DNA of 64,000 nt from Octopus bimaculoides (GCF_001194135.2 NC_068991.1:52640832-52704831); one strand, 5' to 3'. Positions 11,400 through 51,419 are shown, counted from the first letter of the stretch. Notes: generated from the letters alone by a model not told the origin. Numbers and translations are program-made.

Positions 11400-12001
11400 C
11401 CCCCCACGGCGTAAATTTTAATAAAAAAATCTTACGTGGACTCCTGAGGGCCATAACGACCCCGATTGAAACCACCAAGCCAACAAACGTACATTCTTGT
11501 ATATTTACTAAGTGATTCTTCTACTACTTTTGGCCAATGTAGTGAAGTTTATGGTTCACTTGATAAAGTGAATAAAATACTACGGCCTTTTCTTTCACCT
11601 TCTTTTCTAATTCACTTTTTTAATACAGCCCGCATCTGTTGCGACATGCTTCTCATTCCAACCCTTCTATATCCGGTTATGTTTACCGAGCTGATATAGA
11701 AATTCACTTGTATTTCTGGAGTGTTAACTATTTACCTTGAGTAGCGACAATTTAAACCACGTATCCCAGGACATGATTTAAAATTCACATCTTTCACGAA
11801 AATAGATTTTATAATCGTTTATATTTACCGTGAAAATTGAATGTTTTCACTATACTTCAATTCGATATATACATATATATATATATATAAAAGAGAAAGA
11901 GGCTAATACTATAAATGTTCTGTTGTTAGCCCTACCTTGATATTCCGTCGTGACCTTAATTTGAGGACTTAATCTCGACTGAACTCGAAGTAGAAGTTAT
12001 A
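11400..12001. promoter_or_regulatory. Putative promoter / 5-prime UTR region of the IL17R-like gene, possibly bidirectional
   Basis: Repeat-free stretch locally enriched in CpG directly upstream of the ATG; a minus-strand donor (GTAAG) at 11431-11435. No TSS can be fixed from sequence alone. Confidence 0.4.
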
Positions 12002-12094
12002 ATGATTTTTGTCCTCATATTTTTGCTTACTACTCTGAATTCTGGTGAAACTACAGACTGTCCAGCATCTGGAAAAGTAACGCCTGATAATCTT
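12002..12094 (+). CDS. IL17R-like exon 1, signal peptide [31 protein letters not shown]
   Basis: ATG followed by a hydrophobic core; donor CTT|GTAAGT at 12095, phase 0; lies downstream of a CpG-richer region. Confidence 0.75.
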
Positions 12095-15000: not shown

Positions 15001-15185
15001 TATGTATTTGTATATACAGATGTATATGTGGCTATGTGGCGATCTTACGTATATGCATACATACAAAGATGTATATATATATGCATACATACGTAGATGT
15101 ATATATATATATATGTATACATACATAGATGTATATATATATATGTATACATACATAGATGTATATATATATGTATACATACATA

Positions 15186-15220
<35 letters not shown>

Positions 15221-17529
15221 CGTGGTGGTGGAACAATGTTGTTGACAGGGCTATTAGACAAAAGATACAGACTTGGAAAGACTGGAAGAACGGTGGTAGC
15301 AGGGAATTGTATCAGACTGCCAGAAGGGAAGCTAGGAGACAGGTTTATTTAGCCAGAGGGGAAGCAGATAAGAAAAAGTTTGCCAATGTTCTGCGCCGTG
15401 AGGACCAAAGACTTGAGGTATTTCGTGTTGCAAGACAGTGTGTGAGAGAGAATCGTGATGTCGAGGGAGAGAAATGTGTTCGCATGGATGATGGTACGCT
15501 TGCACTAAACGAGGCTGCAAAGAAAGAGGTTTAGAGACGCCACTCCGAAAGATTTCTCAATAAAGAGAATGAATGTCGACCCAACAGAGGGACCAGCTAT
15601 CCGAGTTGACAGTACCTTGGTANNNNNNNNNNNNNNNNNNNNNNNNNNNNNNNNNNNNNNNNNNNNNNNNNNNNNNNNNNNNNNNNNNNNNNNNNNNNNN
15701 NNNNNNNNNNNNNNNNNNNNNNNNNNNNNNNNNNNNNNNNNNNNNNNNNNNNNNNNNNNNNNNNNNNNNNNNNNNNNNNNNNNNNNNNNNNNNNNNNNNN
15801 NNNNNNNNNNNNNNNNNNNNNNNNNNNNNNNNNNNNNNNNNNNNNNNNNNNNNNNNNNNNNNNNNNNNNNNNNCCACTTATTATTTTTTATTTTCCTAAA
15901 ATTTTCGTTGCGTCTTGCAACCTTTTCAATAGTCAACACACTCACCGTTAAAATTTCCACTTATTATTTTTTATTTTCCTAAAATTTTCGTTGAGTCTTG
16001 CAACTTTTCAATAGTCTTGACTCTTGAAAACGTTGCAAAACTCAACGAAAATTTTAGGAAAATAAAAAATAATAAGTGGAAATTTTAACGGTGAGTGTGT
16101 TAAATTTTAAGGCACGATAAGAAAATGACTCTCCCCAGACACAACAGTATATATATATATATAATATATATCATATCGAAAAATCACCGTGATTTTTAGT
16201 GACTCTAGGCAGGCGTATGTGAGAATCACGGAATATCTATTTAGCCAGGCGATCTTTCTATCTAAAGTTCAATATTTCACGTTATCCTAAAGAACATCTT
16301 TAAAAATACAAGTTAAATTTTTTTAGGCCCCAACTATCGCATTATTTCATGTTTAGTAAGGCCATCGCAAATGTCAGAAGACAAGCATTTCAAAATAACA
16401 ACTGTGAAGTATAGTTGTCTCAGCATTTGTATGCGAAGAAGTTTATTCAACAACATTAAAATACAAAAATCCATTTCATATATACCTTCATACATGTTTC
16501 ACTTTAAAACAAAAGTAAATAAATAAAAATTTATACGAAAATAAATGAACAAAAGCAGTTGATATGGATAACAGTTCCGAGAATCAGAGCGACAGTTCTG
16601 AGAATCCAAACGAAAGATTACCCCAAGCGGATACCATTGCAAAAAATTTTTCGAGTGCATTCAACGTATCTCAGCTCCAAAGATTTGGCTGCTATTTCTA
16701 GCACTCCTTGCTACAACGTAACATCTATTTGCGATAACAGACCCGAAATACCTGTTATGTAATGGCAGGGCGTGCAAGAAATAGCAGCCAAATATTTCCT
16801 TTTCTGAGTGATTTCGATGTCACATTCGTTGAAAGCATGCAAAATAACCTGGAAAAGAAAAACAAACCCACGAAACAAAACTCCGTTGTTGGTCACTGGT
16901 AGCCTAATACAGGGGTTTTCAAACTTTTTGACTTGCGGACCCCTTTATATTTCAGTAAGTTATAAACGCTTATGAAATTTATACATAAATAGTTGCTTAA
17001 AATAACATATATTTTTACATTTGTTTATTTAACAGTATTTAACAAATAGGTTTATTGTCAATTAAAAGATTTCGATTAAAAACCATATATAAAATCAAAT
17101 TGCCCATAAAAAGTATTTGCTGTTCACGGACCCCCTGTCTTGTCTTTGCGGACCCCCTGTGGTCCGCAGACCACAGTTTGAAAACCACTGGCCTAGTATA
17201 TATCCAAAACTAATGGTACTTGAAAACTGATTGGGTAGAAAACACATCAAAAAAGCAAGCGTTTCAAATTAAAATCTGGCAATAAAAAATATGTATAAAA
17301 TAACATCACCAATATTTCCCACTAGGTTTACACATGCCCCAACTACAACATCTGAACATGCTGCCAAACACTATCTTTGAAAGACTGCAATACCTATAAC
17401 CCAGCCTGCAACAGAAAAACATACAAACAATAACAATAATCAAAAGCTTTTTACTTCCTGAGCAACCCATACCATCACACACACACACGCACGCGCGCGC
17501 GCGCACACGCACACGCACACACACACACA

Positions 17530-17560
<31 letters not shown>

Positions 17561-20500: not shown

Positions 20501-23500
20501 TTTGGTTTATTAATTTGCATAATCTTGGTATAGTCTTAAACTTATTTTGCCAACAATTTCTAATCATTTGAATTAATTGTGCATTAAAATTATTCCAATT
20601 ATATACAGATATATAACTCCTATATCATTTAAAAGAAAAAAATTCTACATAAACTGTAAAAAGTGATATTATTTTATGGAAGGTCTTTGAGCTTCCATAG
20701 TCTTCTTTTCCAGATTGATTTATTTCTCTGAGTCTGTTTAGCTCTAATTCTGAAGTCACTAACTTGTAACTGATGTTGGGTTGTACACTCTTCACCTGGG
20801 AAAGACTTTGTATTTGTAACATCTGTCTATCTTGTTGCCTGATGAGGAAGTAGTCAGTCTGGCTTATGTTACCACCAGACTGATAAGTAATTAGGCTGCT
20901 GGTTGGTTTTCTGAAATTAGTGTTGCAGATCATAAGATCATTTGCATCACAGAACCCCAGCAGTCTTGTTCCCTCCCTATTCCTAGGTCCTAAGCCATAG
21001 CCACCATTCACTCCCTGGAATCCATGGGGATACTTCCCAACATATTGAAGCCACCAGCCACAGTAACAAAGTCTCTATCATTTGTAATTGTGATAGTCTA
21101 CAAAAAGACCACATGGAATTGGTCTTTCTGCTCATCAGCCAGCCCAGACTGAGGAGTAGAAGCAGAGATAAATGTAACTGTTAATTTGTCTATGATAAGT
21201 CTCATCTTAATTACCCTATCACATACTCTGACTGCCTTAATTACCTTATTCACCCACTTTTCTGCTAACAGTATGCCTACACCACCCGCTCCATCCCTCC
21301 TGCTTACCCAGAAGAATTTGAGTCTGTCTCTTACCCATGAGGTATCTAGCTGAGGCTCCCCTCCATCTTTTTTCTTGCACACCACACACATCAACTTGGC
21401 GCCGCTCCAACATTTCAATAATCTCCCCACTTCTTCCTTTCATTGTGCCAACATTGATGATAGCAACCGTGTGATTGTGTTTTTAGGAGTGATGGTGGTA
21501 AGGCAGTTGTGAAACTCTTGTCATCATATGTCTAAATAAAAGACGGGGTGGAGTTGACCTAATTATAGCTTGACTTCAGTACGGTTTACAATCGCAACAT
21601 ATTTTTATTGCGCTTTTCTAAATGTTTTAGTTAAAATTAAATTCCCAGGAAATGAAATATTTTTTTAAATTCCTCTTTTTTTTTTTTACAGCTACATTAT
21701 TCTCTTTATAAGACAGACTGTAAGTATTTGATTAAATTACCTTTCAAATTGAAAAATTATACTAGAATCATATTTATCTATATTAATAATCCATATAAAG
21801 ACGTGTACAATTTATCATTTTACATTTTTCAATTATTTTATATTGGCAATCCAATCATAACAACCACCATAGAAACTATTTGAGATATAATTATGTTGAT
21901 GCGATGAAAAATTGATCTAGAATATTGTAGTGATGTTATAGAGAATAAAGGTAGATATGTGGTGGCTCAAAGTGTTGATAGGCAGGGGAGCTTCTGCCAG
22001 ACTCTTCGCAGGCAATGAACACTGGTACAAATTCTTTTAGTTGGGTAACTACATGACTGTAGGTTGGGAAAGTATGTTGCATGCAAAGAAATTGAATAGA
22101 GTGGTTGAGGTAGTCAGAGTATGTAACAGAATAAATTTTAAATTAGGTGAGAAACAAAAGCAGTTGTTATATCTACTGAGACACCTCAGTCTGGATTGAG
22201 AGATGAGCAAAAGAACTATTTCTGTGACATCCGCTTATCATGGTTGGTGACTTTAATATACATGTTAGTACAAACATGGTAAAGTGGGCATAACAATGGT
22301 GATGACATTAGCAAATGTCATCATTATTGTGTGTGTGTGTGTTGTATATACACACTTGTTTATCTGCCTCTGTGTGTGTGTGTATGTATATATATAATTA
22401 TTCAATATTAATAGTTTTGTATTAGAAAACTAATAGAATTTATACAAGGCTGTAATAAGAAGTGCTCAAACTAGTCGAGACAAAGTACAAAATTAATTGC
22501 AGAATAAAACCATTAGGTCATCGATTCAAAAAGCCACAATCCACCAATGACCACATATAGGAAGTACAGCATAAACCACAAAACCAAAGTAGTAAAGGGG
22601 AGTAAAAATTTATACATAATAATAAAATCAATTAAAAATATAATAGAATAACGTAATTAAATAAACTGCGATTAAAAAGTGATTAAAAATATTATAGAGC
22701 GGTACATATATAGTGGAATAAAAATATATATAGAGAGAGAAAAAATAATATAGAAAAAACAATAAAATAAAATAAATAAATAGGGAAACGTAGTAAAATA
22801 GTTCATTCGTTGAGACTAAAGGCTAATAAAAGAAGTTTAAGTTTAAATTGTACGAAAGTTCATTACTTCCCTCAGGACAGCAAATTTAGCAGGCAAAATC
22901 CAATTTCGTAATTCATACACAGGAATACCGAAGTACACGGGACGACATAATAACACAACATCCAATGTGTAACAAGGTAAAATCCATATTTCACCATCAA
23001 CCTTATTTAAGTCCAAGAATATCAAGGCACACAAGTCGATACATTAAACCAACATCCAGCAGGTAACATCGGTAAAATCAAACCCTAATTTAACATCATT
23101 TACAAAGGATTACAAAAATAGGTCGGACTACAAACACAAAACACCTATGGCCATTTCGATGTATATATATATATGTGTAAATATATATATCATCATCATC
23201 GTTTAACGTCCGCTTTCCATGCTAGCANNNNNNNNNNNNNNNNNNNNNNNNNNNNNNNNNNNNNNNNNNNNNNNNNNNNNNNNNNNNNNNNNNNNNNNNN
23301 NNNNNNNNNNNNNNNNNNNNNNNNNNNTGGTTGGTAAGCAAGCTACTTACTACACAGCCACTCCTGCGCCTATATAAATATCTTGACCAAGAAAGACTGG
23401 TTTAGTGTACTTCTGTAAAAATATTGTTTTGTGTGTGATTTTTTTGCATGAGTTGGACAGGTTTGACAAGTATCATGTCATGCTTTTTCATCATGTGACA

Positions 23501-35500: not shown

Positions 35501-38500
35501 TTTATAAGTACATTTTTTGTATTTAAAAACATGTTGCATAAAAAATTGTGTTTTTTGTGGGGCCGGGAAAGGATTAATAGCATTTCAGTTGAGAAATTTG
35601 ATTTGACATACGAGTAATTTGAGTTATGAGCCCAGTCACGGAATGAATTAAACTTGTAGGTCAAGGTACCACTGTATTTAAATTGTCTTTCTATTTTTCT
35701 ATCAGATCTAGGTCTGGCTATAAAACAAAACAAAGAAAATTAGTTTGTGGCTATTTTGTTTTAGATGATGTAATTATGTAAAGAATAATTCTTTTGGGTA
35801 TATCAATACTATTGCTAAAACAAACTTTTTTTTTCCTACTATTAAATGAATAATAATTTTTGTCTTGACTAAAAATTAATTTTAACCATTGAATTCGGTA
35901 AAATATAAATCATTTTACCTAATTTAATGGCACCAGAATTATTGGTGTATCTATAAATTTTATTTTATAGTTACACCAGGTTTCAAAGATATCTCTGAGA
36001 ATTATAGATTTACTTTGAAAAATATTCAGAGTCAAATTTACAAATTTGTTTTCTTTTTTTTTTTTTTTCAGACAACCTCAAGATTAACCCATGACTTTCT
36101 TGGAATATGTCCTGGAAGCTACTACATAACTGTAAGTTATTTTCCATATTGGTCTTCATTTACCACATTTTGTTAAATTATGACATTTAAAAAGAATTCT
36201 GTTAATTTGGATAATTGCATAAATTATTGTTGAATGTGTTCCCTGAGTTTCATTCTTGTAGAATTTTCCACTTCTTCCACATTTTCAGATTCTCAGGACT
36301 TACCACTAGCTATGTAATTTTAAAAAAAAATTTGTCTCTTCCATGACAAACACTTCTACACATACTCACACATCTACTGCTATCAGTCTCTACCAAACTA
36401 GGGACTTTCTTTCTTTTCCAGAATTTGTATTAGTTCACTTGACTTTTCATTACTGTTTTATAGTGTTGTTTCTAAATTTCTTCTTTCACAGGTTCCTAAA
36501 ACCTTGCCCATTTTTTTCTTTCCTTCTCAGCCACTTACATTTTCTCTCTCCTCCTTTGCTCTTCTGATGAAGAACTCACATCTAAAATGTCAACTCTTTC
36601 TCTTCCTTCATTTCAATGTCAAACTAATACAATACTTATTAAAACTTGTCTCTCCTGTGTTGTCTTTTTTTTGGGGGGGGGTCATTACCTTTCCAATACA
36701 TGTGTGTGTGTGTGCATTGATTTTTATCTTAGTACCTCTTGTCACTTGATATGTGATTACCAAATATGTAAACTTGAAAGGGTGTTATTCTGTATTCTTT
36801 AAATTAGATTTATTTCAGGTACTGTTCACATAATAAATTCTTTGAAATAGGTGTATGGCAATAAGTTTGCTTCCCATCCACATAGTTTTAGGTTCAGTTC
36901 TACTGTGTGGCACCTTGGCCAAATATCTTCTATAGTCCAGGGCTGACCAAAACCATGTGATTCAGTCTGGTAGATGAAAATTGTAAAAAGTCCTGTGTCT
37001 GTGTGTGTTACTGTCTCCATTGTTTGATACCATCCTGCAAACAGTGTCCTTCATTTTCAGTAGTTTGTGAAAACATGTCTGGCCATGGGAAAATCTTACC
37101 TTACTTGGAAACAGGTGAGGGTTGTTGACAGGAAGGGCATCTGGCCATAGAAAATCTGCTTTGAAAACTGTTGTCCACTCCATGCAATAAAGGATGTTAA
37201 AATGATTATGATAATCTATATTTTATTTAAACTTTTGTTGTCTTGACATTAACAAAAAACTTATTCTTTTGCAAAAGTGGGAATGAAAGACTAATTGTGA
37301 TTGGTATTTGATTGGGATGATACAAACATAATAGTATTAAAAAGTATTGAGTCCTCTCTTGAAGGTTTATTGAAATATTTATTCAGTAGATGTTTTTACT
37401 CTTTTTTAAAATTTTCTTTTTAAAGGTTGAAATATTTGATGAAAATCCCTTTACCAACTGTATTTGTATAAACCTTAATGAAAAATGTGGTGAAGGCTGT
37501 GTTCGGACCCGAACCAATTCCATTGAAAGTAAGCAATACTAAAACAATGCCAAAGAAAAAACTTTATTATGTATTGTGCATTTTGCATAAAATGTTTGGA
37601 AATCAGCCACAAAGGTTAATGGGGGAGGGGGTCTGTGAGAGTTTCAGAGTAATGTATTAGGTCATCCCACAAATAATGCAGTTTTTTTTTTATACTTCTT
37701 TGACTTTTCCAGATTAAGATAGTACTTTTTCACTCTAAAGTATACCCTCTATTTTCTACAATGCTCTGCCATCTATCTGGTAGACTTGCAAGGCTCCTTT
37801 TCCAAAATTCACTTGTCCGTGACAAAAAGTACTCCTCCAGTGCTGTTCTGACCTTGTCTATAGAATTCATTTTTTCCGTTCAGATGATTTTGAAGACTGC
37901 GGAATAAATAATCAGATGGAGCAATGTCCGGTGAATATGGTGGGTCGGGCATCGTTTCCCATTCAAACTGCTCCAGCCTTGCTGTACGTGGCTGAGCATT
38001 ATCCTGATGGAAGAATACCTTTCGTCTTGAAACCAAAGATGGTGGTTTTTCTTCTAGCACTGACTTAAGCCACTGAAGCTGCTCACAGTAGATCTTTATC
38101 TTTTGGTTTGGGTTTAAAAGTTCAAAGTGGCCTAAACCTTTCATATTCCACAATACATAACAGCACCTTATATGAGTGAAAACTTTCTTTAGCCTGGGGT
38201 ACTGGTGTTTCTCCTTACCCACTGTCTTTGGCACTGGACAATTTTATAGAGAACCAGTCACTATTCAGTCCAAAAAAAGGTCCATTCAGGAGATGTGACA
38301 GCAAAGAAGAGCACACATTCACTCTCTGTGCGCAGTTAGACTCGGAAAGTTTGTGAGGAACCCATTGACTCAATTTGCTAACTTTTCCGATGGCATGCAG
38401 GTCTCAATGAATGGTTGAATGACCAAATCCAAGCTTCTCTGCTAGTTCCTCAACAGTTACAATAGGATTTTGTTCCACCAGGGTTTGTAGGATGTCCTCA

Positions 38501-41500
38501 TCGAGCTCTACAGATCTTCCAGGATGAGGCTTGTCTTCTAGGCTGTAGTTTCCACCTTGGAATTTCTGGAACCACTGTTGACACTGGCTTACGCTTATTG
38601 TCTGATCCCCGTATACTGCATTAATATTCCTCACATTTTCCATTGCATGGTTGCCTTTATTGAACTCTTAAAGCAAAATATGCTGAATATGCCCCTTTGT
38701 CACTTCCATTATAACTTTGAAAAAATAACTGTTAAAATCGTACTGCACTCTTCAAAACTTGCACTAAGAATAAGTACAAGGTGAAATTACTACCTGCTTT
38801 TATAGCAAGTTGATGCAAATAGTTTATCGTGTCCCCCTCTGACTTTTAGTTCATGCAATTGAAAAAACCACATTATTTATGGGGTGACCCAATAGTTTGT
38901 ATGATGGTGGCAGTCATGAGTAAGGTGCTTAATGGACTTTTGGGGAATAAGACAGTATATGTAATGAGAGGAATTAGGGGTGATAGGTAGCCAGCCATTA
39001 CAGCCAGTAAAGTGGTATGTACCAACAAGGAATCTTCTTATTCTTTGAATATCTTCTACTTCTATAACTAAATATAAGACTGTTTGTTAGTCAGTGTATA
39101 ATGTAAATAGTCTCAATGTAAAAAGTTCACCATTTCAGGACACTTTCTCTGATAGCGATTGCTTCTTTATAAAAGTGATGAGAGATTTTGTTCAGTGAGG
39201 GAAAAAGTCCTGGACTGGAAAGTGACGCATTTATTTCGCTGTGAAAGAACACCTGCACTTGTAGTCCATGGAGCATCTGTTTCAATGTGTTGTGGACCTT
39301 CATATAAGGTAGATGAGAAAAGTTGAAAGTAAGTGAATAACATCCAGCATGCTTTTTTGAATAGCATGTAATTTTTGCAATGGAAGTCTACGACTTAACA
39401 GAATAACCATGTACCTCCTCTACAGTAAGACACCTATTTCTGCTTCTGTCAGTCTAAGCTTTCATCATCTGTCACAAGATTACCTCCTTCAGTGCCTCCT
39501 CCCCTCTCAAAGGATATTTGTCTTGCAAGTTACTTGGTGGCCCTGCCAGTGCTAGTGCCATCTAAAATGCATCCAGTCCATACTGTAAAATAGTTAGCAT
39601 TTGGAAGGACATCCAGCTGTAAAAAGATCATACCAAAACTGATTTACCTGTGCTTGTGCCACATAAAAAGCACTTAGTCCACTCTGCAGAGTGATTGATG
39701 TTAGTAAGGGCATCCAGCCGTAAAAAAATCATGCCAAAACAGACGCTGAAGCCTGGTGTTTTCTGCCTAGCCAGCTCCTGTCAAACCATCCAACTCATAT
39801 CAGCATGGAAAGTGGACATTAAATGATGATAATGATAGAAAGTATTTGAGAAAGTAAGGTTTACTCATAAACCTCTACTTTTCTCTTAACAGCTTCCAGA
39901 GACCAGCAACACTTGAGTAATAGAGCTACTGGATTCTAATCCAGTATACATGTATTTGATAAAATAAGAGTCCACTGGAGATTAGGATGGGAGGATGGCA
40001 TATGTGAAGATAATTTTACATATTAAGGAATATAGATGGCTTAAAATGTGTAAGTGGTTTGAACATTTTGTGTAGGAATTAGGAAATCTATTCAGAGTAT
40101 CCATTGAAAATTAGTGATTCAGGGGGAAATATTTTCAAAGCTATCAGAGGTTCATATTTAAAAAAAAAAAAATTTTTTTTTTTGTTCTGGTTCAGGTAAA
40201 AAATGTTTCATTTTCAAGTGATACTGTGTAAGTTTTTATTTTATTTTGTCTTAAATTTTCTTTTATAGAGATTGGTCAATCATGCTTAGAAGTGACAACA
40301 ACTACAAGTCCTTCGACAAAAGAACCTCCAAACCCCCCAAAATTAACCATTTTCCTTGCTGTTGTTGGAGCTACGGTTGGTCTGTTACTCCTAGGTCTCA
40401 CTGTTTATTGTTTAAAGCGTAAGTATACAATTCTTCTTCAAACATATAATGAATCAGAATCACAGTATATTGGATAGATATTATCCCTTAGTGGGTTGGA
40501 TTCACAACCCCTAACTTTCTTGGATTTATATATATATATATATATATATATTTGACAGGAAGGACAACAAAAGAAAGAAAGATACCTTGATATTATGCAA
40601 ATAGAGGAATTTATCTGTAAAAATATGTGACACTTATTCTTACAGATATATATATATATATATTGATGGCTTAGCAGGCCAAAACTTTGAAGTCATTGTC
40701 AATGCTATTAAAGAATAATAAATATATACTCCATGTAAACTATTGAACAATTCTTTAGTTTAATGTAAAATTGCTTTATTATATTGTTATATTTTGGGAT
40801 GGTCTCTTTTTTTAACTAAATAACCACATGTACTATATACTTGTTCTTCACGTCAGCTTTATTATGTTTGTTGATGCTACTCCTAGTGGTGAACTAGCAT
40901 ACCTTTCAGGAAAACCTTAGATAAAATGAATCTATGGATTAAAGTTGTAGAAAGGCCAGGAACCCCCATAACATTCCTGAACTGTAGAACGTATCCATTC
41001 AAAAGGATTCCACGTACGTATAACAGCTGTATAGTATGTAAGATGAACCCACAGGTTAACTGTAAGATTAGGAATGTAGACTGTAGAATATGGTGTGCTG
41101 AGGGACAGTGCAGAAACCAGACAATAACATACATTGCAGAGACAGCATGTAGCATAGGGAAGGAAATAGGTGAGCACTGTTGGGAGCTTAAGGAGGACAA
41201 AAGCCTGTCAGTGCTCTATGAACATGCTCACTTAAAAGCTTGGTCAATAACATAGATGTTCATATATTATCAACCCATAGAAATAGACATGGCACTTAGG
41301 TTACAGAGGCCACACACATAGTTGTGTGTGTGTGGTTCTGATTATATAGCCTTAAGCAGATGAGTTGAATCTCACATAGAAGATACCTGTTTTTCAAGAA
41401 ATATTACCTGTAGGTCTGGTTCTTATTTTGTCACAGCTAGAAAAAAACCTAAGGCCATAAAATCTTGAATATTATAACAAGAGACACAACAAATGACCAG

Positions 41501-43942
41501 CAATTCATGTGGACTCAAGATTTACAAACTGATAGTAAAATGCATTTCTTACTCAGCTCTTTCACCTTTATAGTAAGCTAAAATGTGGATATCTATATGG
41601 GACATTATCTATATATATGTGTGCTTTGGTGTATGTTTGCCATAATCATCATTATTTAATGTCTATCTTCCACACTAGCATGGGTGTTTGGCAGGAGTAG
41701 GCAAACTAGATGGCTACACCAAACTCCATTTGTCTGTTTTAGCCCAGGCTATTCTTATTCTAGCAGCTACACTCTTAGAGCATCTACCCCCACTACTGAC
41801 TTGGTCACCTAGGTAATGGAAGCTATCAACTATTTCTAGTTTTTTCCCCTGGCATGTGATGGAATCTGTTTTCTGTACATCTTCAGTGTTTATTGCCCCT
41901 GTGCATCTGCCACATACAAAAACTATCTTCTCAGTTAACCTTCCTTTGTTATTTCTGCACCTCTTATGTGGCCATAGCTTACATCGGGTACATCTTATGG
42001 CGTTTCTACCTACAACTTTTCTACAGATTGAGCAGGGCCATGTACCTGAAGGGATTTGTGATTTGTCTGCCTTCCTACTTACTAAGACTTTGGTTTTTGC
42101 TAGATTGACTCTAAGATCCTTTGATTCTAGACCTTGCTTCCACACCTGAAACTTCTTTTCTAATTCTGATAGTGAATCAGTTATTAGAGCAAGGTCATCA
42201 GCGTAGGCTGCTCCTGGGAGCTCCTCTGTCTTGAATTCCTCTGTTATTACCTCGAGGACTGTGATGAATAAGAGGGAGCTGAGGACTGATCCTTGGTGAA
42301 CCCCTACTTCTATCCAAGATTCTTCACTGTATTTGTTGTCAACCCTCACCTTACTGACAGCATCCCTGTACATGGCTTGTACATATGTCACCAACCACTC
42401 ATTTATCCCTAGTTTCAGTATTGACCACCAGATAAGGGATCAGGGGACCCTGTCAAAGGCTTTCTCCATGTCATTGAAAGCCAAGTACAGCGGTTTATCT
42501 TTAGTAAGGAATTTCTCCTGCAGCTGTCTTACCAGAAATGTAGCATCAGTGGTGCTTCTCTCTAGCACAAACCCAAACTACATCTTGTCTAAATTAACGC
42601 TCTCCCTAATTAATTGGGTTATGACCCTCTCCGTAACTTTCATCATCTGATCCAACAATTTGATACCTCTGTAATTATTCATATCTAATGTTGTAGCAGT
42701 TGACTATGGTGCTGCTACTCCAGTCATTGGATATGACTCCTTCATGTATCACCTGATTGACTATATGGGTGACTAGACTATAGCCTACACCACCAGGTTT
42801 TTTAAGCATCTCAGCAGTGATTCCTGATGGGCCAGGGGCTTTCCTTGTCTTCATACCCTTAATTATCTACCAAGGTACTGTCAATTCAAATAGCCAGTCC
42901 CTCTGTTGGGTTGACATTTAGCAAACTTTTCATAATGGTATCTCCAAGTCTCTCTTTGCAGCGTCATTAAATGCAAGTGAGCCATCATCCATACAGACAC
43001 ATTTCTCTCCTATGGCATCCTGATACTCTCTCACACACTGTCTTGCAATTCAAAACACTTCAAGTCTCTGGTCCTCATGATGCAAACATTGGCAAATGTT
43101 TTTCTTATCTGTTTCTCTTCTGGTTAAGTAAACCTGTCTCCTAGATTCCCTTCTGGTGATCTGATACAATTCCCTGCTACCATCACTTTTCCAGTCCTTC
43201 CATGCCTGTTTCTTTTCCCTAATGGCCCTGTCAACTACATTGTTCCACCACCACATTACCTTAGGTCAAAAGGGGATTTTACACTAACCACAGATCTGGT
43301 CAGTAACTCTCAACAGGTTGTCCTGTAGGAACCTCCATTTGTCCTCCACATTATATGATGCTATATCCTCTTTTTTTTCATCAAAATCTTCAAGTAATAC
43401 GTCTCTAAATCTCTGACCATTCCAAAGATCCTTAAGCTTTTAGACCCTTCTTTTCCATGCTGGTCGTCTTCTGGGCAGCCATTTAGCCCTGATCTTGAAG
43501 TTACTAACTACTAACCTATGTTGTGGGATGTATTTTTCACTTGGGAAAGTTTTAGTATTTATAAGTAGCCATCTTTTCTGTTTCCTGGCAAGATTGTAGT
43601 CAATCTAACTAGTGTGCCCACCAGACTGGTAGGTGAACAGGTGACTGGCAGTTTTCCTGAAGTTAGTATTACAGATCATAAGATCATTTGTATCACAGAA
43701 TTCCAGTGGCCTGGTTTCCACCTCACTGCAGGTACCAAGTCCATTGCCACCATGTACACCATTGAAGCTCCCTGGATGTTGTCCAACATGCCCATTGAAG
43801 TCACCAGTCACAAAGAGAAGGTCCCTGTCATCCCTCAATCAGGTAGTCTGCAAGAGGATGTCATAAAATCGGTCTTTCTGTTCATTAGGTAGCCCTGGTT
43901 GTGAGGCATGGCCGAGATAATGGTTGCTAATCCACATTGCAG

Positions 43943-43995
<53 letters not shown>

Positions 43996-46141
43996 GTTAC
44001 ACTCTCTGAGCGGTTGATGTTAGGAAGGGCATGGTCAAACCTATGCCAGCATGGAAACGGATGTTAAATGATGATGATGATAACGATATATATATATATT
44101 TGTGTGTGCGTGTGTGCATGTGTATAAATAATTCATGTGTGTGTCTTTGTGTTTGTTTCCCTCCACCACCTGACACCTGGTGTTGGTTTGTCTATATCCC
44201 TGTAATTTAGCAGTTTGGCAAAAGAGACCAATAGAATAAGTACTAGACTTAAAAAATAACTACTGGGATTAATTTGTTTGACTAAAACCCTTCAAGGCAC
44301 TGCCCCAGCATGGCCACAGTCCAATAACTGAAACACATAAAAAGATCAATTTAAGAAGTATGTGACTAGGTTAGTAAAGTGAAATGTCTTTGAACATGGC
44401 TTAGAGCTATTATTGTTAGGAACGAACTATTTCTCTAGAAATTCAATAATCTTTTGTTTCAATAACTGATATCAGATTAAGATTAGCTAGGCTTGTTTTT
44501 TAAGGTCATGTTTAAAAGTTCTTGCATGTCAAATGACCACATAGCAGCTTCCCTTCCTCTGTGGATGATTATGTCTATTTTGAAATCTCACTTTTCTGAA
44601 TTCAAGTTTAATTGTGGCTGGTTTTGGAATTTTATTTTTCTGGAGCCGTGTAAATCGGACCGACTCGAGAGTTGCGAATTGTTACGGACCCGGATTTTCC
44701 AGGGCCGCCGAGAGCGCACCGGATGCCGCCCGGGCTTTGGGCTCGCCGTCGCGTCGGTGCTCGCGGCCCTCTGTTCCCGCCTTGCGTGGGGTCGTGCGGT
44801 CGTTGCACCGCGACGCGCGGCAGGCGTTCGGCCGGCGGCGAACGGTCGACTCGGAACTGGTACNNNNNNNNNNNNNNNNNNNNNNNNNNNNNNNNNNNNN
44901 NNNNNNNNNNNNNNNNNNNNNNNNNNNNNNNNNNNNNNNNNNNNNNNNNNNNNNNNNNNNNNNNNNNNNNNNNNNNNNNNNNNNNNNNNNNNNNNNNNNN
45001 NNNNNNNNNNNNNNNNNNNNNNNNNNNNNNNNNNNNNNNNNNNNNNNNNNNNNNNNNNNNNNNNNNNNNNNNNNNNNNNNNNNNNNNNNNNNNNNNNNNN
45101 NNNNNNNNNNNNNNNNNNNNNNNNNNNNNNNNNNNNNNNNNNNNNNNNNNNNNNNNNNNNNNNNNNNNNNNNNNNNNNNNNNNNNNNNNNNNNNNNNNNN
45201 NNNNNNNNNNNNNNNNNNNNNNNNNNNNNNNNNNNNNNNNNNNNNNNNNNNNNNNNNNNNNNNNNNNNNNNNNNNNNNNNNNNNNNNNNNNNNNNNNNNN
45301 NNNNNNNNNNNNNNNNNNNTATATATATATGATATGGGTTTCTTTCAGTTTCCGTCAACCAAATCTACTCACAAGGCTTTGATTGCTATTTTATTATTGA
45401 TTGTGTAAATTTATATTTTCAGGAACACTCCAAGAGAAAAGAGGGCTGTTATTTTATACAGAGGACCATTCTTACCACTGTGAAGCCATCAATCAGTTTA
45501 TATCTTTCATGGATAAGAATAAATGTAAACTAGAAGTTGCTGCTCACTTAGTGAAGGGTGATAATCCATTAAAACTGAGTTTTGAAATTCAAAAGTCTGA
45601 TTTTATAATTCTTGTTTACTCCAAAGCTCTTCACAAAAGAATTCAGGCTTGGAAAAGCAACCAAGATTACGTAAATTTTTTAAAAGAGGATAACTCTGCA
45701 CTGTTGACAACTTCTATTCTCAAGGAGCTTCAAGCAAGCAACAAACTTACCATTTGTATGTTTCCTCAGGCACCAAACTCCAGTATCAGCAGTGAATTTC
45801 CTTCAGTTAAGTGTTACACTCTTACAAAAGAGTTGAACTTACTTATTCAAGAAATCCATGGAACAGGAGTGGATCAAGAGCTTGCTGTTCTTGTCAGAAG
45901 TAACAAACTCAATCATAAATTTAACTCTTTGACAAACACAATTAAAGATGCTGCCAACTTTGAAGAAACTAGTCCCAATTGGTTTGAAGACAAATATATT
46001 TGCCCCAAGAAAATAGAGTCTTTAAATGAAATGCCTGATTACAGTGAAAAATTTGTGGATGGAGGTGAACATAGTATTTACTCTCTCCCTGTAAGTGACA
46101 TATTGGAACAGATAAATGCAAAGAATGATTCTGTAGCTTAA
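12002..46141 (+). CDS. IL17R: Interleukin-17 receptor-like (SEFIR-domain) gene, 10 coding exons, 558 aa predicted (span includes introns)
   Basis: Ten exons join with canonical AG/GT sites and consistent phases (0,1,1,0,1,0,0,1,1). The exons sum to 1677 nt, an exact multiple of 3, with no internal stop. Domain order is signal peptide, FnIII-like ectodomain, TM, SEFIR. The family-level call comes from recalled IL-17R motifs; orthology to a specific vertebrate subunit (RA or RD) is not established. Confidence 0.88.
14400..14640 (+). mobile_element. Merlin (IS1595/ISXO2-like) transposase remnant
   Basis: [39 protein letters not shown], then frameshifted VQPGSVI. This matches the recalled Merlin motifs KRKYNRGR..WVFGGIER..RDAATLLPII..I.PG(S/T)xI. 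Confidence 0.7.
14900..15219. repeat. Compound (GA)n/(CA)n/(TA)n/(TACA)n microsatellite
   Basis: Directly visible low-complexity repeats. Confidence 0.95.
15220..15622 (+). mobile_element. RTE-clade LINE ORF fragment
   Basis: [46 protein letters not shown], the same family as 43050-43256. Runs into a gap. Confidence 0.85.
15935..16101. mobile_element. Palindromic MITE (partly duplicated on the left, next to a gap)
   Basis: aacacactcaccgttaaaatttccacttattattttttattttcctaaaattttcgttgag and its reverse complement form long inverted arms. A second copy of the left arm is at 15874-15930. Confidence 0.8.
16910..17190. mobile_element. hAT-type MITE
   Basis: TIRs CAGGGGTTTTCAAAC and GTTTGAAAACCACTG; 8-bp TSD gcctaata / gcctagta. 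Confidence 0.85.
17634..17733 (+). repeat. Minisatellite, 4 x 25 bp AATTAGGTCTCAGTAAGTTAACCTC
   Basis: Three identical units and one with a single mismatch; no spacers. Confidence 0.95.
19037..19860 (+). mobile_element. LTR-like repeat related to the solo LTRs at 57314 and 58744, with an internal 124-bp tandem duplication
   Basis: Begins tgtagaaacgatcgtgcgaacc (compare tgtaatagaacgaccgtgcaaacc) and shares internal blocks with 58850-59460. The duplicated units start at 19233 and 19357. Right end not defined. Confidence 0.65.
20070..20460 (-). mobile_element. L1/Tx1-like LINE ORF2 C-terminal fragment
   Basis: [21 protein letters not shown], then frameshifted [31 protein letters not shown], resembling Tx1-clade C-termini. 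Confidence 0.5.
20640..21520 (-). mobile_element. RTE-clade LINE, apurinic endonuclease region
   Basis: Motifs [56 protein letters not shown] and SQTDYFL; frameshifted. Confidence 0.9.
21692..21719 (+). CDS. IL17R-like exon 2 (28-nt microexon, LHYSLYKTD)
   Basis: Long poly-T tract plus ACAG acceptor; donor GTAAGT at 21720. It bridges phase 0 to phase 1, exactly what exons 1 and 3 require. Confidence 0.7.
24695..24917 (+). mobile_element. tRNA-derived SINE (second family)
   Basis: A-box/B-box-like 5-prime part (gtggcctaggggtgagggtg..ggtttgattccc) followed by a conserved-looking body. Confidence 0.5.
24918..26146 (+). mobile_element. Mariner transposon, near full length, decayed
   Basis: TIR-like ends cagggtactgtaaagttcctggcttt and ggaatctttcagcactccttg-TA; motifs [28 protein letters not shown] and [13 protein letters not shown]. 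Confidence 0.92.
26288..26416 (+). CDS. IL17R-like exon 3 ([43 protein letters not shown])
   Basis: TTTCAG acceptor and GTAAGA donor; 129 nt, phase 1-1, open frame. Joins exon 4 to give AVWSANFTRLKGF. Confidence 0.85.
26780..27170 (+). mobile_element. Penelope-like element, GIY-YIG endonuclease fragment
   Basis: [46 protein letters not shown] matches the recalled Penelope C-terminal pattern. Confidence 0.75.
27230..27800. repeat. Degenerate (CA)n/(TACA)n low-complexity tract
   Basis: Directly visible; it explains the His/Thr- and Cys/Val-rich spurious ORFs here. Confidence 0.9.
28105..28217 (+). CDS. IL17R-like exon 4 ([37 protein letters not shown])
   Basis: TTTTCGTAG acceptor and GTGAGT donor. 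The LxGFxI...CRxxDxS pattern is typical of the IL-17R first FnIII-like domain. Confidence 0.88.
29837..29954 (+). CDS. IL17R-like exon 5 ([39 protein letters not shown])
   Basis: TTGCAG acceptor and GTAAGG donor; YxVxxxSLP motif; phase 0-1. Confidence 0.88.
32804..32967 (+). CDS. IL17R-like exon 6 ([54 protein letters not shown])
   Basis: TTTTGCAG acceptor and AAG|GTTTGT donor; CxxW...VxF..P..C...YxVxL pattern of the second FnIII-like domain; phase 1-0. Confidence 0.88.
33274..35674 (+). mobile_element. Tigger/pogo DNA transposon, full length (about 2.4 kb) but disrupted
   Basis: TIRs tagtggtaccttgacttacgag and cttgtaggtcaaggtaccactg-TA. CENP-B-like HTH ([14 protein letters not shown]), [26 protein letters not shown] and ILQPMDQ across frameshifted ORFs 33742-35237. 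Confidence 0.93.
36072..36131 (+). CDS. IL17R-like exon 7 ([20 protein letters not shown])
   Basis: Poly-T plus CAG acceptor and GTAAGT donor; 60 nt, phase 0-0; FxxxxPGxY motif. Confidence 0.88.
37426..37528 (+). CDS. IL17R-like exon 8 ([34 protein letters not shown])
   Basis: TTTTTAAAG acceptor and GTAAGC donor; Cys-rich CxC..C...C membrane-proximal motif; phase 0-1. Confidence 0.86.
37657..38892 (-). mobile_element. Mariner transposon, full length, decayed
   Basis: TA-flanked TIRs ttaggtcatcccacaaataatgc and cattatttatggggtgacccaa; motifs [24 protein letters not shown] and [21 protein letters not shown]. Confidence 0.93.
40269..40418 (+). CDS. IL17R-like exon 9, Thr/Pro stalk plus transmembrane helix ([25 protein letters not shown])
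   Basis: TTTTATAG acceptor and GTAAGT donor; 150 nt, phase 1-1; about 23 hydrophobic residues followed by a basic stop-transfer sequence. Confidence 0.9.
40900..41260 (+). mobile_element. Penelope-like element, second GIY-YIG fragment
   Basis: [45 protein letters not shown]. Confidence 0.65.
41650..43935 (-). mobile_element. RTE-clade LINE, large decayed copy (EN, RT, 3-prime tail)
   Basis: RT motifs [21 protein letters not shown] and NLAKTKVL; EN motifs [10 protein letters not shown] and MICNTNFRK; [14 protein letters not shown]. Confidence 0.92.
44643..44863. pseudogene. 28S rRNA-derived fragment(s), two pieces in opposite orientation
   Basis: GC-rich island. The minus strand at 44688-44730 reads gcggcatccggtgcgctctcggcggccctggaaaatccggg (compare conserved LSU tccggtgagctctcgctggcccttgaaaatccggg). 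The plus strand at 44822-44863 ends ggtcgactcggaactggtac (compare ccgacttagaactggt(g/a)cggac). Abuts a 457-N gap. Confidence 0.7.
45423..46141 (+). CDS. IL17R: IL17R-like exon 10, cytoplasmic SEFIR domain and C-terminal tail
   Basis: Long clean ORF after a TTTTCAG acceptor. It contains [11 protein letters not shown] (SEFIR box 1-like), [10 protein letters not shown] and SPNWFEDKY, which resembles the PDWFE motif of vertebrate IL-17RA/RD. Stop TAA at 46139-46141. Confidence 0.9.
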
Positions 46142-50364: not shown

Positions 50365-51419
50365 TAAGCATTACTCATTTGATGCCTCTCATTTGCAAAC
50401 TTACAGAATCTTACCATTCTTTACTTTGCCTGAAGCTGGTTCTATGTTTCTATAAAAGACAGCAACTAGAATTGGTTCACTGCATATAAACTGACATAGT
50501 TTGTAGTGAGCCACTCTTGCATGGACTATTTATATTTAAGTCACCGCCAGTTGGTTTATGTAGATTGTTACCAGGCTATCGTCAGAGGTTAGAAAAAATG
50601 AGAAAAGCTATCATTCTGCAACTCTCTCTGTAAATAAAATAATCATAGAGGCTGGTGCATAGATAGCAAGCAGACTGAAGTTCTTGTCAAATATATGACA
50701 TCAATTCCATTATGCATCTATGTCTACACACTGATATGTTATGAATTTGAATAATATGAATAGGTTTTACCTGTCAGTTCCCATTCTTCATATTACATTT
50801 CATTTTCTGTTCATTTTTCTTTTGTTTTAATGATAGTGTTCTAATCACCTCACCCAGTAACTACTTGCTCTCCTCATAAAATGTCTTGCTGACTAATGTC
50901 ATATTGTTAACTGGTCCAGAGAAAAGTGATACACAAGAGACAATTCTGGTTTTCTTCTCAAATATAGAAAGTATAGTATGGTTACCTAGAAGAGATAAAC
51001 TATGGAATCTTTTCTACTCTAGGCATAAAACCCGAAATTTTGGGGGAACTGGGGGCCAGTTGATTAGATCGACCCCAGTACACAACAGGTACTTAATTTA
51101 TTGACCCCAAAAGGATAAAAGGCAAAGTTGACCTGAGAAAGTATAGAATGTAGTGGATAGGGAAGAAATGGTGGATAGATTGGAGATTATATAAATAAAA
51201 TAGATGATTCAAAGAGAAAAAAATAAAGGATTAAAAGTGGCCAGAGAAAGATAAATTATTTACCAAATTATGTCATGATTTCAATATCATGCTTTTACTT
51301 TTTTATTGTAAACAATACTAATTCTAGAAATAACTGGGGTGTGGCAGTGATAGAGATGTGGTGAGAGGTATGTAGGATATAGTGTGGTCTGGGATGAATT
51401 ACTTCCTTTCTGGAGGTGT

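What the first reader, a model, noticed from the sequence alone, without database searches (positions are those of the whole stretch)
12002..46141. Complete cephalopod IL-17 receptor-like (SEFIR) gene hidden in 34 kb of repeats
Seen: ten exons, three of them (28, 60 and 103 nt) too short to stand out in the ORF track, splice in phase into a 558-aa receptor with signal peptide, two FnIII-like Cys modules, TM and SEFIR. Established: IL-17 receptors signal through SEFIR-SEFIR contact with Act1/CIKS, and Octopus has a strongly expanded IL-17 ligand family whose receptors are much less characterised. Inference: this is a candidate receptor for those ligands. Automated gene models may fragment it or miss the microexon.
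Basis: partly seen in the sequence, partly recalled or inferred. Interest (0 to 1): 0.75.

Follow-up and report, generated by a model that had tools for sequence, protein, structure and literature searches.

The report
Annotated octopus IL-17 receptor-like gene

Summary
There are ten GT-AG exons between 12002 and 46141, including exons of 28, 60 and 103 nt. They splice in phase into a 558-aa protein, and all five assembly gaps lie in introns.

The protein has these parts:
- a signal-peptide-like N-terminus;
- an IL-17R D1-like module, supported only transitively;
- a full Ig_ILCR1 domain (72 bits);
- one transmembrane helix;
- a SEFIR domain, supported by Pfam above cut-off, a profile hit to human IL-17RA SEFIR (4nux, E=2e-11), and an AlphaFold model whose best PDB matches are IL-17R SEFIR structures.

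It aligns end to end with a 562-aa Argonauta hians protein at 49% identity.

The window is O. bimaculoides CM046611.1:52640832-52704831. The 558-aa product is identical to XP_052827759.1 (LOC106875974 isoform X2). The suggestion that automated models miss the gene therefore holds only for older annotations and for the O. vulgaris orthologue, which is split into two models.

The 5' end is the weak point. RefSeq lists three alternative first exons, and only X2 carries a signal peptide.

Ligand binding and signalling are inferred, not shown. Novelty: already known. Interest: low.

The parts
12002..12094 (+). Exon 1 (93 nt, aa 1-31): start codon, signal-peptide-like core [11 protein letters not shown] and a Cys-Pro motif. 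This is the first exon of RefSeq isoform X2.
   Evidence: The donor is CTT|GTAAGT at phase 0. The 11-residue hydrophobicity maximum is 2.96. The exon is present in XP_052827759.1 and in the old model P0006. blastn finds no nucleotide homologue in the paralogue or in O. vulgaris. Only a 13-nt 5'UTR motif and the Cys-Pro motif are shared. This is the weakest exon of the model.
15569..15619 (+). Alternative first exon of RefSeq isoform X3 ([17 protein letters not shown]). It has no signal peptide.
   Evidence: Its donor GTA is the last three bases before the gap that starts at 15623, so this exon is doubtful.
16817..16954 (+). Alternative first exon of RefSeq isoform X1 ([12 protein letters not shown]...LYIS). 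It has no signal peptide.
   Evidence: The donor is GTAAGT.
21692..21719 (+). Exon 2, a 28-nt microexon (LHYSLYKTD plus one base).
   Evidence: It has a T-rich tract followed by ACAG as acceptor and a GTAAGT donor. Its 28-nt length and both splice sites are conserved in O. vulgaris and in LOC106875973.
26288..26416 (+). Exon 3 (129 nt), the start of the D1 module ([12 protein letters not shown]...AVWSA).
   Evidence: tblastn hits with P0007 and P0008 have E=8e-15 and 7e-16. Splice sites are conserved.
28105..28217 (+). Exon 4 (113 nt), D1 module ([14 protein letters not shown]...SISN).
   Evidence: O. vulgaris has an in-frame 3-nt indel inside the exon and a 1-nt indel just after the donor.
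29837..29954 (+). Exon 5 (118 nt), the end of D1 ([13 protein letters not shown]...LYSLPES...DTF).
   Evidence: A weak ILCR1_N match covers aa 85-150. The hhalign comparison with bivalve and annelid D1 gives E=5.4e-15.
32804..32967 (+). Exon 6 (164 nt), the first half of the Ig_ILCR1 (D2) domain.
   Evidence: Pfam PF23608 on the 63-aa ORF (32803-32994) that contains this exon gives E=2.1e-8.
36072..36131 (+). Exon 7 (60 nt), the middle of Ig_ILCR1 ([20 protein letters not shown]).
37426..37528 (+). Exon 8 (103 nt), the Cys-rich end of Ig_ILCR1 ([25 protein letters not shown]...).
   Evidence: With exons 6-8 joined, PF23608 scores 72 bits over the full profile.
40269..40418 (+). Exon 9 (150 nt): the stalk and the single transmembrane helix (aa 295-318).
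   Evidence: The 19-residue Kyte-Doolittle mean reaches 2.5. There is an in-frame alternative acceptor at 40290.
45423..46141 (+). Exon 10 (719 nt including the stop): the whole cytoplasmic tail, made of SEFIR plus a helical extension with an NWFE motif.
   Evidence: Pfam SEFIR scores 26.9 and 25.1 bits against a cut-off of 23. The family profile hits IL-17RA SEFIR 4nux at E=1.9e-11. The AF2 model has pLDDT 76.8, and its top PDB matches are 9ot1 and 4nux. dN/dS against O. vulgaris is 0.44, p=0.003.
33742..35237 (+). Remnant of a pogo/Tigger-type DNA transposon inside intron 6.
   Evidence: HTH_Tnp_Tc5 and DDE_1 matches.
37809..38643 (-). Mariner transposase remnant inside intron 8.
   Evidence: Transposase_1 and HTH_48 matches.
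41714..42394 (-). LINE reverse-transcriptase remnant inside intron 9.
   Evidence: RVT_1 at 51.6 bits.

Best explanation
Window 12002-46141 is the gene LOC106875974 of Octopus bimaculoides (chromosome CM046611.1). It is a ten-exon gene spread over 34 kb of transposon-filled introns, and its isoform X2 encodes a 558-aa type I membrane protein of the IL-17 receptor family.

Shown here:
- the exon structure;
- the domain order: signal-like N-terminus, D1 module, Ig_ILCR1 (D2) module, one transmembrane helix, SEFIR domain with a helical extension;
- its position as the first of three clustered paralogues (LOC106875974, LOC106875973, LOC106875972).

Inferred from the family:
- the ectodomain binds a dimeric IL-17-type cytokine, of which this species has 31-36;
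- ligand binding brings receptor chains together;
- the cytoplasmic SEFIR domains then recruit an Act1/CIKS-like SEFIR adaptor by SEFIR-SEFIR contact, leading to TRAF/IRAK-type signalling towards NF-kB or IkB-zeta-like factors, as in mammals and as with ILCR-1/ILCR-2 and ACTL-1 in C. elegans.

The ectodomain evolves about as fast as silent sites, while the SEFIR domain is constrained. This fits a receptor whose ligand-binding face changes quickly while its signalling end is kept.
For: - Gene model and phases.
- Product identical to RefSeq XP_052827759.1, and gene span equal to 12002-46141 with 0 mismatches over 54,140 nt.
- Pfam on the spliced protein: Ig_ILCR1 at 72 bits over the full profile, and SEFIR at 25.1 bits against a cut-off of 23.
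- End-to-end 49% identity to the 562-aa Argonauta hians protein GAB1607498.1.
- BLASTP to oyster 'interleukin cytokine receptor-related protein 1' gives E=1e-12 for the ectodomain and 5e-7 for SEFIR.
- The family profile hits human IL-17RA SEFIR 4nux at E=1.9e-11 and the IL-17RB/RA chain 9ot1_B at E=8e-17.
- The AF2 model of exon 10 has pLDDT 76.8 and pTM 0.76. Its three best Foldseek PDB matches are 9ot1_D, 9ot1_C and 4nux, ahead of TIR domains.
- The D1 module matches the D1 of bivalve and annelid relatives by hhalign at 98.4% probability, E=5.4e-15. Those relatives reach IL17R_fnIII_D1 at 30.7 bits against a cut-off of 26.
- The reading frame has been kept. There are no frameshifting indels in 1271 aligned exon nt, against 16.4 expected at the intron rate. 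SEFIR dN/dS is 0.44, p=0.003.
- Literature: IL-17 expansion in this species, PMC8353272. SEFIR-Act1 mechanism, PMC4014126 and PMC12828022 (abstracts only). C. elegans ILCR-1/ILCR-2 and ACTL-1, PMC7190641.
Against: - No transcript data could be examined, so expression and the choice of first exon are untested.
- RefSeq gives three alternative first exons and only X2 has a signal peptide.
- By blastn, exon 1 has no nucleotide homologue in the paralogue or in O. vulgaris.
- Ectodomain dN/dS is 0.89 against O. vulgaris and 1.27 against the paralogue. Neither differs from 1, so relaxed constraint cannot be told apart from diversifying selection.
- The SEFIR score is only just above Pfam's cut-off.
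- phmmer of the single protein against PDB finds nothing.
- The profile and the AF2 alignment that gave the strong SEFIR results included distant relatives with strong SEFIR domains.
- The D1 match to ILCR1_N is below cut-off (15.9 bits against 27).
- No ligand, adaptor or signalling output was tested.
Confidence: 0.8

Rival explanations
1. The gene is a young tandem duplicate drifting towards pseudogene status. It is still open and is picked up by gene predictors, but it is no longer a working receptor.
For: - Ectodomain dN/dS is about 0.9-1.3.
- Mismatch in exons (12.0%) is about the same as in introns (12.4%) against O. vulgaris.
- The ancestral-type first exon seen in O. vulgaris and in LOC106875973 is not found here.
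- The neighbouring copy LOC106875973 has already lost its SEFIR exon.
- The window copy's protein is further from the O. vulgaris gene product than the neighbour's is, 65% against 79% identity.
Against: - All 558 codons are open and all 18 splice sites are canonical.
- There is no frameshifting indel where about 16 would be expected (P about 7e-8).
- All ectodomain cysteines and the D1 and D2 motifs are kept.
- SEFIR dN/dS is 0.44, significantly below 1.
Confidence: 0.1
2. The 5' end is different from X2. The main transcript starts at another first exon (X1 at 16817, X3 at 15569, or one hidden in a gap), so the main product either lacks a signal peptide or has an N-terminus not seen here.
For: - RefSeq lists three first exons for the same exons 2-10.
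- The homology shared with the paralogue starts only at about 21527.
- Three gaps lie in intron 1.
- Exon 1 shows no nucleotide homology by blastn, and its local alignment score to the paralogue's exon 1 is no better than shuffled sequence.
Against: - Only exon 1 at 12002 gives a hydrophobic leader and the Cys-Pro motif that aligns with the paralogue, O. vulgaris and Argonauta.
- A 13-nt motif about 30 nt upstream of the ATG (AATCTCGACTNAA) is shared with the first exons of the paralogue and of O. vulgaris.
- The X3 donor sits on a gap edge.
- A receptor ectodomain with 12 cysteines and 4 N-glycosylation sequons needs secretion.
Confidence: 0.12
3. It is a true SEFIR receptor, but not an immune receptor for the expanded IL-17 ligands. 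It could act in neuromodulation, as ILCR-1 does in C. elegans, or as a modulator of other pathways, as IL-17RD/Sef does.
For: - Its closest named relatives are 'interleukin cytokine receptor-related protein 1' proteins, named after C. elegans ILCR-1, which acts in neurons.
- The abstracts of PMC8021910 and PMC7805053 describe IL-17RD/Sef as a regulator of FGF and other receptor tyrosine kinase signalling.
- No expression data were available here.
Against: ILCR-1 still signals in response to an IL-17 ligand, so this rival concerns the tissue and the output rather than the mechanism. A fast-evolving ectodomain in a tandem cluster is more typical of immune receptors.
Confidence: 0.2

Closest known systems
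XP_052827759.1, uncharacterized protein LOC106875974 isoform X2 (Octopus bimaculoides RefSeq)
   Same: Identical over all 558 residues, with the same gene span on CM046611.1.
   Different: Nothing differs in sequence. RefSeq gives no function and also lists isoforms X1 (573 aa) and X3 (544 aa), which have other first exons.
Argonauta hians GAB1607498.1 (562 aa), the long-form octopod homologue
   Same: 49% identity from residue 1 to 555, with the same order of signal peptide, D1, Ig_ILCR1, transmembrane helix, SEFIR and tail.
   Different: It comes from a different species and its SEFIR score is slightly higher (31.1 bits). Orthology was not resolved.
O. vulgaris syntenic gene on OX597824.1, annotated as two models (P0008 of 384 aa and P0001 of 277 aa)
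   Same: Exons 2-10 are collinear and the splice sites are conserved. The SEFIR exon is 82% identical at protein level.
   Different: It is split by the annotators, and a retroelement gag-like N-terminus is fused on. Its first exon resembles that of LOC106875973, not exon 1 of this gene. Three-way intron distances are mosaic.
Invertebrate 'interleukin cytokine receptor-related protein 1' / C. elegans ILCR-1-type IL-17 receptors (for example Magallana gigas XP_065938370.1)
   Same: Same domain order: a D1 module (IL17R_fnIII_D1 / ILCR1_N type), then Ig_ILCR1, a transmembrane helix and SEFIR. BLASTP gives E=1e-12 and 5e-7.
   Different: The oyster, mussel and annelid proteins are 730-800 aa with long C-terminal tails and strong SEFIR scores (77-93 bits). 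The octopod proteins are shorter with a divergent SEFIR (25-31 bits). Identity is only 21-27%.
Human IL-17RA (SEFIR structure 4nux; IL-17RA/RB/ACT1 assembly 9ot1)
   Same: The cytoplasmic domain matches by profile (E=1.9e-11) and by predicted fold (Foldseek TM 0.58-0.69), including the helical extension that ends in a WFE motif.
   Different: Sequence identity is about 13%. The ectodomain has no detectable sequence match to vertebrate IL-17R structures. The human receptor is much larger, with a long distal tail.

Membership tests
IL-17 receptor family (SEFIR-bearing type I receptors) | Cytoplasmic SEFIR domain | tested here: met
   Pfam PF08357 scores 26.9 bits on exon 10 alone and 25.1 bits on the full protein, against a cut-off of 23. 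The family profile hits 4nux at E=1.9e-11. The top three PDB matches of the AF2 model are IL-17R SEFIR chains. Caveat: the score is close to the cut-off, and the profile and the AF2 alignment were helped by distant relatives.
IL-17 receptor family (SEFIR-bearing type I receptors) | Single-pass type I topology: a signal peptide, and one transmembrane helix between the ectodomain and SEFIR | tested here: met
   There is one hydrophobic segment at aa 295-318 and a hydrophobic N-terminal core at aa 2-12. No dedicated signal-peptide predictor was available. The leader exists only in isoform X2.
IL-17 receptor family (SEFIR-bearing type I receptors) | Membrane-distal fibronectin-III-like D1 module | tested here: inconclusive
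   There is no direct Pfam hit above cut-off (ILCR1_N 15.9 bits against 27). The octopod D1 profile matches the D1 of bivalve and annelid relatives (hhalign 98.4%, E=5.4e-15). One of those relatives reaches IL17R_fnIII_D1 at 30.7 bits against 26. The link is therefore transitive only, and no structure model of the ectodomain was made.
IL-17 receptor family (SEFIR-bearing type I receptors) | Binds an IL-17-fold cytokine dimer | not testable with these tools
   This needs binding assays. The species has 31-36 IL-17 genes (PMC8353272).
IL-17 receptor family (SEFIR-bearing type I receptors) | Recruits an Act1/CIKS-type adaptor through SEFIR-SEFIR contact | not testable with these tools
   This is inferred from PMC4014126, PMC12828022 and PMC7190641.
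ILCR1-like invertebrate IL-17 receptors (Pfam ILCR1_N + Ig_ILCR1) | Ig_ILCR1 domain (PF23608) | tested here: met
   72 bits, E=5.3e-20, aa 164-268 covering profile positions 2-114 of 114.
ILCR1-like invertebrate IL-17 receptors (Pfam ILCR1_N + Ig_ILCR1) | ILCR1_N domain (PF25519) | tested here: inconclusive
   15.9 bits, below the cut-off of 27, and covering only profile positions 82-150.
TIR-domain receptors (TLR / IL-1R type) | TIR domain rather than SEFIR | tested here: not met
   There is no Pfam TIR hit. In the fold search, TIR structures rank below the IL-17R SEFIR structures and have lower TM-scores.
CUB-domain proteins (the UniRef name of the old fragment A0A0L8FVB3) | CUB domain | tested here: not met
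   There is no CUB hit on the spliced protein at E up to 1. The 94-aa fragment consists of exon 1, the microexon and translated intron.

The most novel reading that the evidence does not exclude
LOC106875974 keeps a working SEFIR domain, while its tandem neighbour LOC106875973 has the same ectodomain type and transmembrane helix but a decayed SEFIR exon. The two could form a signalling-receptor and decoy pair. Their ectodomains diverge at about the neutral rate or faster, which could reflect diversifying selection driven by the lineage-specific expansion of IL-17 ligands in octopus. Mosaic similarity to the single O. vulgaris gene would then reflect gene conversion or unequal crossing-over that keeps reshuffling the cluster.
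Probability: 0.15. Interest if true: 0.5.

Novelty: already known. Interest (0 to 1): 0.18.

Why it matters
Nothing new is added to the gene catalogue, because the locus and the exact protein are already in RefSeq. The work does give a functional label to a protein RefSeq calls 'uncharacterized', namely an IL-17 receptor family member of ILCR1 type.

It also shows three other things:
- The 5' end is the uncertain part of the model.
- The O. vulgaris orthologue is mis-split into two models.
- The gene sits in a three-gene cluster in which one member has lost its signalling domain.

In the paper library searched here I found no study dedicated to cephalopod IL-17 receptors. For anyone working on the octopus IL-17 expansion, this cluster is a sensible place to look for receptors.

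Tried and rejected
- I first concluded that the gene was unannotated, because the homology search returned nothing above 81% identity for the SEFIR exon. I rejected this after an exact look-up found the identical RefSeq protein. That search tool evidently leaves out proteins the window itself encodes.
- AlphaFold on exon 10 with a six-sequence alignment of close paralogues gave pLDDT 36.5 and was unusable. Adding six distant relatives gave pLDDT 76.8.
- phmmer of the single 558-aa protein against PDB sequences found only transmembrane-segment noise.
I used the paralogue P0007 and the exon 10 translation instead.
- A search for an ancestral-type signal-peptide exon upstream of exon 2 found only the neighbour's exon 1 at 62807. 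blastn and tblastn of the exon 1 region against the paralogue and O. vulgaris found nothing convincing. A local alignment of exon 1 to the paralogue's exon 1 scored no better than shuffled sequence.
- The 551-aa variant using the acceptor at 40290 is not in the protein collection and fits the paralogues less well.
- Haplotype duplication as the origin of the two tandem copies was rejected, because the intron sequences of the two copies differ at about 11% of aligned sites.
- Rfam and tRNA scans of the whole window found nothing.

Full report
**Where the window comes from.** The window is Octopus bimaculoides assembly GCA_001194135.2, chromosome record CM046611.1, positions 52,640,832-52,704,831 on the plus strand. 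A locus fetched from that record matches the window with 0 mismatches over 54,140 bases. Seven runs of N are present, and five of them lie inside the finding.

**Checking the observation.** Paralogous octopus proteins found with the last ORF and with the N-terminal candidates served as guides for tblastn against the window. I read the splice sites directly from the sequence and assembled the coding sequence.

The result is ten exons:

| Exon | Coordinates | Length (nt) |
|---|---|---|
| 1 | 12002-12094 | 93 |
| 2 | 21692-21719 | 28 |
| 3 | 26288-26416 | 129 |
| 4 | 28105-28217 | 113 |
| 5 | 29837-29954 | 118 |
| 6 | 32804-32967 | 164 |
| 7 | 36072-36131 | 60 |
| 8 | 37426-37528 | 103 |
| 9 | 40269-40418 | 150 |
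| 10 | 45423-46141 | 719 (stop included) |

All nine introns are GT-AG, all phases agree, and the product is 558 aa. My first pass used an in-frame acceptor 21 nt downstream (40290) and gave 551 aa. The paralogue alignment shows that the conserved 'G..SC' stalk motif needs the upstream acceptor.

**The gaps.** Three gaps lie in intron 1, one in intron 2 and one in intron 9. None interrupts an exon; the closest ends 103 nt before the exon 10 acceptor. The protein aligns from residue 1 to 555 with a 562-aa Argonauta hians protein, with no unexplained internal gap. No exon is therefore missing in an unread stretch.

**More than chance.**
- The ORF containing exon 6 hits Pfam Ig_ILCR1 at 34.6 bits over half the profile. 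Exons 6-8 joined give 72 bits over positions 2-114 of 114.
- The splice sites of exons 2-10, and the 28-nt length of the microexon, are conserved in O. vulgaris and in the neighbouring paralogue.
- In alignments with O. vulgaris the introns carry 16 indels per kb, 80% of them not a multiple of three. The 1271 aligned exon bases carry two indels, both of 3 nt. About 16 frameshifts would be expected, so P is about 7e-8.

**What the protein is.**
- N-terminus: hydrophobic core [11 protein letters not shown].
- Ectodomain: 12 cysteines and four N-glycosylation sequons.
- Transmembrane region: a single hydrophobic helix at aa 295-318.
- Pfam hits on the spliced protein: Ig_ILCR1 (aa 164-268, 72 bits), SEFIR (aa 321-456, 25.1 bits against a cut-off of 23) and a sub-threshold ILCR1_N match (aa 85-150, 15.9 bits against 27).

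**The SEFIR call was tested further.**
- An exhaustive search with the paralogue P0007 reached oyster, mussel, Solemya and annelid proteins of 730-764 aa. These have strong SEFIR (77-93 bits) and Ig_ILCR1 domains. The oyster protein is named 'interleukin cytokine receptor-related protein 1'.
- A profile of the window's exon 10 with its paralogues and these relatives hits the crystal-structure sequence of human IL-17RA SEFIR (4nux) at E=1.9e-11 and the IL-17RB/RA chain of 9ot1 at E=8e-17. The alignment runs through to the WFE motif of the helical extension.
- An AlphaFold model of exon 10 built on that alignment has mean pLDDT 76.8 and pTM 0.76. Its three best Foldseek matches in the PDB are two chains of the IL-17RA/RB/ACT1 assembly and IL-17RA SEFIR. 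TIR domains come next.

**The N-terminal module.** An hhalign comparison of the octopod D1 profile with the D1 of the distant relatives gives 98.4% probability and E=5.4e-15 over 103 columns. One of those relatives passes Pfam's IL17R_fnIII_D1 cut-off (30.7 bits against 26). 'Two FnIII-like Cys modules' is therefore solid for D2 and supported only transitively for D1.

**It is already annotated.** The homology searches returned nothing closer than 81% to exon 10, and only a 94-aa fragment (UniRef A0A0L8FVB3) for exon 1. That fragment reads through the microexon donor into the intron. I therefore first thought the gene was unannotated.

An exact-sequence look-up corrected this. The 558-aa protein is XP_052827759.1, 'uncharacterized protein LOC106875974 isoform X2'. 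The gene on record spans exactly 12002-46141. The homology tool evidently omits proteins encoded by the window.

Isoforms X1 (573 aa) and X3 (544 aa) differ only in the first exon:
- X1 starts at 16817-16954.
- X3 starts at 15569-15619, and its donor GTA is the last three bases before a gap.
- Neither has a hydrophobic leader.

The 2015 RefSeq model was a 428-aa protein starting at M131. It does not describe the current O. bimaculoides annotation.

**The weak point is exon 1.**
- It has a consensus donor and the right phase.
- It has a leader and a Cys-Pro motif that aligns with the paralogue, O. vulgaris and Argonauta.
- A 13-nt motif about 30 nt upstream of the ATG is shared with the first exons of the paralogue and O. 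vulgaris.
- Its coding part shows no significant nucleotide similarity to those exons.
- The collinear homology between the two tandem copies begins only at about 21527.

**Neighbourhood and evolution.** The next gene downstream, LOC106875973 (P0007, 340 aa), has its first exon at window 62807-62887. It has the same exons 2-9. Its SEFIR exon is reduced to a fragment with an internal deletion and a stop codon, so it encodes a membrane-anchored ectodomain without a signalling domain.

LOC106875972, a short form that lacks D1 but has SEFIR, lies about 22 kb further on, on the other strand.

O. vulgaris has one collinear gene at the syntenic place. It is annotated as two models, one of them with a retroelement gag-like N-terminus.

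Three-way intron distances between the window gene, the neighbour and O. vulgaris are all 10-12% and mosaic along the gene. This suggests that the duplication is about as old as the species split, with later gene conversion or unequal crossing-over. I did not resolve it.

dN/dS results:

| Region | Compared with | dN/dS | Note |
|---|---|---|---|
| SEFIR exon | O. vulgaris | 0.44 | Fisher p=0.003 |
| Exons 2-8 | O. vulgaris | 0.89 | not different from 1 |
| Exons 2-8 | paralogue | 1.27 | not different from 1 |

Together with the intact frame, this fits a constrained signalling end and a fast-changing ligand-binding end. Relaxed constraint on the ectodomain is not excluded.

**Introns.** The introns hold transposon remnants:
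- pogo/Tigger in intron 6;
- mariner in intron 8;
- a LINE reverse transcriptase in intron 9.

'Hidden in repeats' is a fair description.

**Mechanism.** The gene structure, the domains and the family membership are shown. The rest is inferred from the family:
- an IL-17-type dimer binds the D1/D2 ectodomain;
- the receptor chains are brought together;
- the SEFIR domains recruit an Act1/CIKS-like adaptor (PMC4014126 and PMC12828022, abstracts);
- C. elegans ILCR-1/ILCR-2 work the same way with ACTL-1 (PMC7190641).

O. bimaculoides has 31-36 IL-17 genes (PMC8353272). In the library searched I found no paper on cephalopod IL-17 receptors.

**Verdict.** The object is an already annotated, uncharacterised member of a known receptor family. 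Interest is low.

Noticed in passing
window 62807-62887 (+); locus L002 10001-51167, SEFIR remnant at L002 51157-51318: The downstream tandem paralogue LOC106875973 (XP_014779803.1, 340 aa) starts in the window. It has the same D1, Ig_ILCR1 and transmembrane exons. Its SEFIR exon is a fragment with a deletion and an in-frame stop (KRS*AWK), so it would encode a SEFIR-less, possibly decoy-type, membrane protein.
   Followed up: partly
window 44650-44863: A stretch of about 215 nt with about 60-68% G+C, rich in CpG, sits directly against the gap at 44864 in an otherwise AT-rich intron. Homology to O. vulgaris stops at 44655 and resumes at 45383, while O. vulgaris has only about 68 nt between those points. 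The stretch could be an insertion, a contig-end artefact or foreign sequence. Rfam found nothing.
   Followed up: partly
window 15569-15622: The first exon of RefSeq isoform X3 ends with a donor GTA that is the last three bases before the assembly gap at 15623. This isoform may therefore be an artefact of the gap.
   Followed up: partly
loci L003 and L001 (O. vulgaris OX597824.1:34514866-34598795): The single syntenic O. vulgaris gene is annotated as two separate proteins. One is 384 aa, with about 150 residues of retroelement gag-like sequence fused to the receptor's N-terminal half. The other is 277 aa and starts in the transmembrane exon. Joined together they would give a full-length receptor.
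   Followed up: partly
window 21720-44655 compared with L002 and O. vulgaris: Three-way intron divergence is mosaic. The two O. bimaculoides copies are closest near the microexon (6.5%). O. vulgaris is closest to the neighbour copy across 23.8-28.7 kb, and closest to the window copy near exon 6 and before exon 10. This suggests gene conversion or unequal crossing-over in the cluster.
   Followed up: partly
window 11973-11985, about 30 nt upstream of the ATG at 12002: The motif AATCTCGACTGAA is shared (12 of 13 bases) with the same position upstream of the first exons of LOC106875973 and of the O. vulgaris gene, although the coding parts of these first exons are not alignable. It is possibly a conserved 5'UTR or promoter-proximal element.
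   Followed up: no
window 12002-12094 plus 21692-21883: The old UniRef entry A0A0L8FVB3 (94 aa, 'CUB domain-containing protein') consists of exon 1, the microexon and translated intron 2. The CUB name has no support in Pfam on the spliced protein.
   Followed up: yes
locus L006 (CM046611.1:52756545-52800837, minus strand): A third family member, LOC106875972 (412-424 aa, a short form with Ig_ILCR1, a transmembrane helix and SEFIR but no D1), lies about 22 kb beyond LOC106875973 on the opposite strand. A fourth, LOC128251274, is on another chromosome (L004).
   Followed up: partly
window 9689-10081 (+), 25235-26022 (+), 51382-52008 (+), 20625-21430 (-): Further transposon-like ORFs lie outside or between the exons. 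By eye they look like mariner-like transposase and LINE-like fragments. The ORFs tested at 20625-21430 and 25235-26022 gave no Pfam hit at E up to 0.001, and the others were not tested.
   Followed up: partly
method note: The homology search did not list the window's own RefSeq protein at all, and one search also failed to list P0006 although the query contained it. 'No close hit' from that tool is therefore not evidence that a gene is unannotated. The exact look-up is needed.
   Followed up: yes
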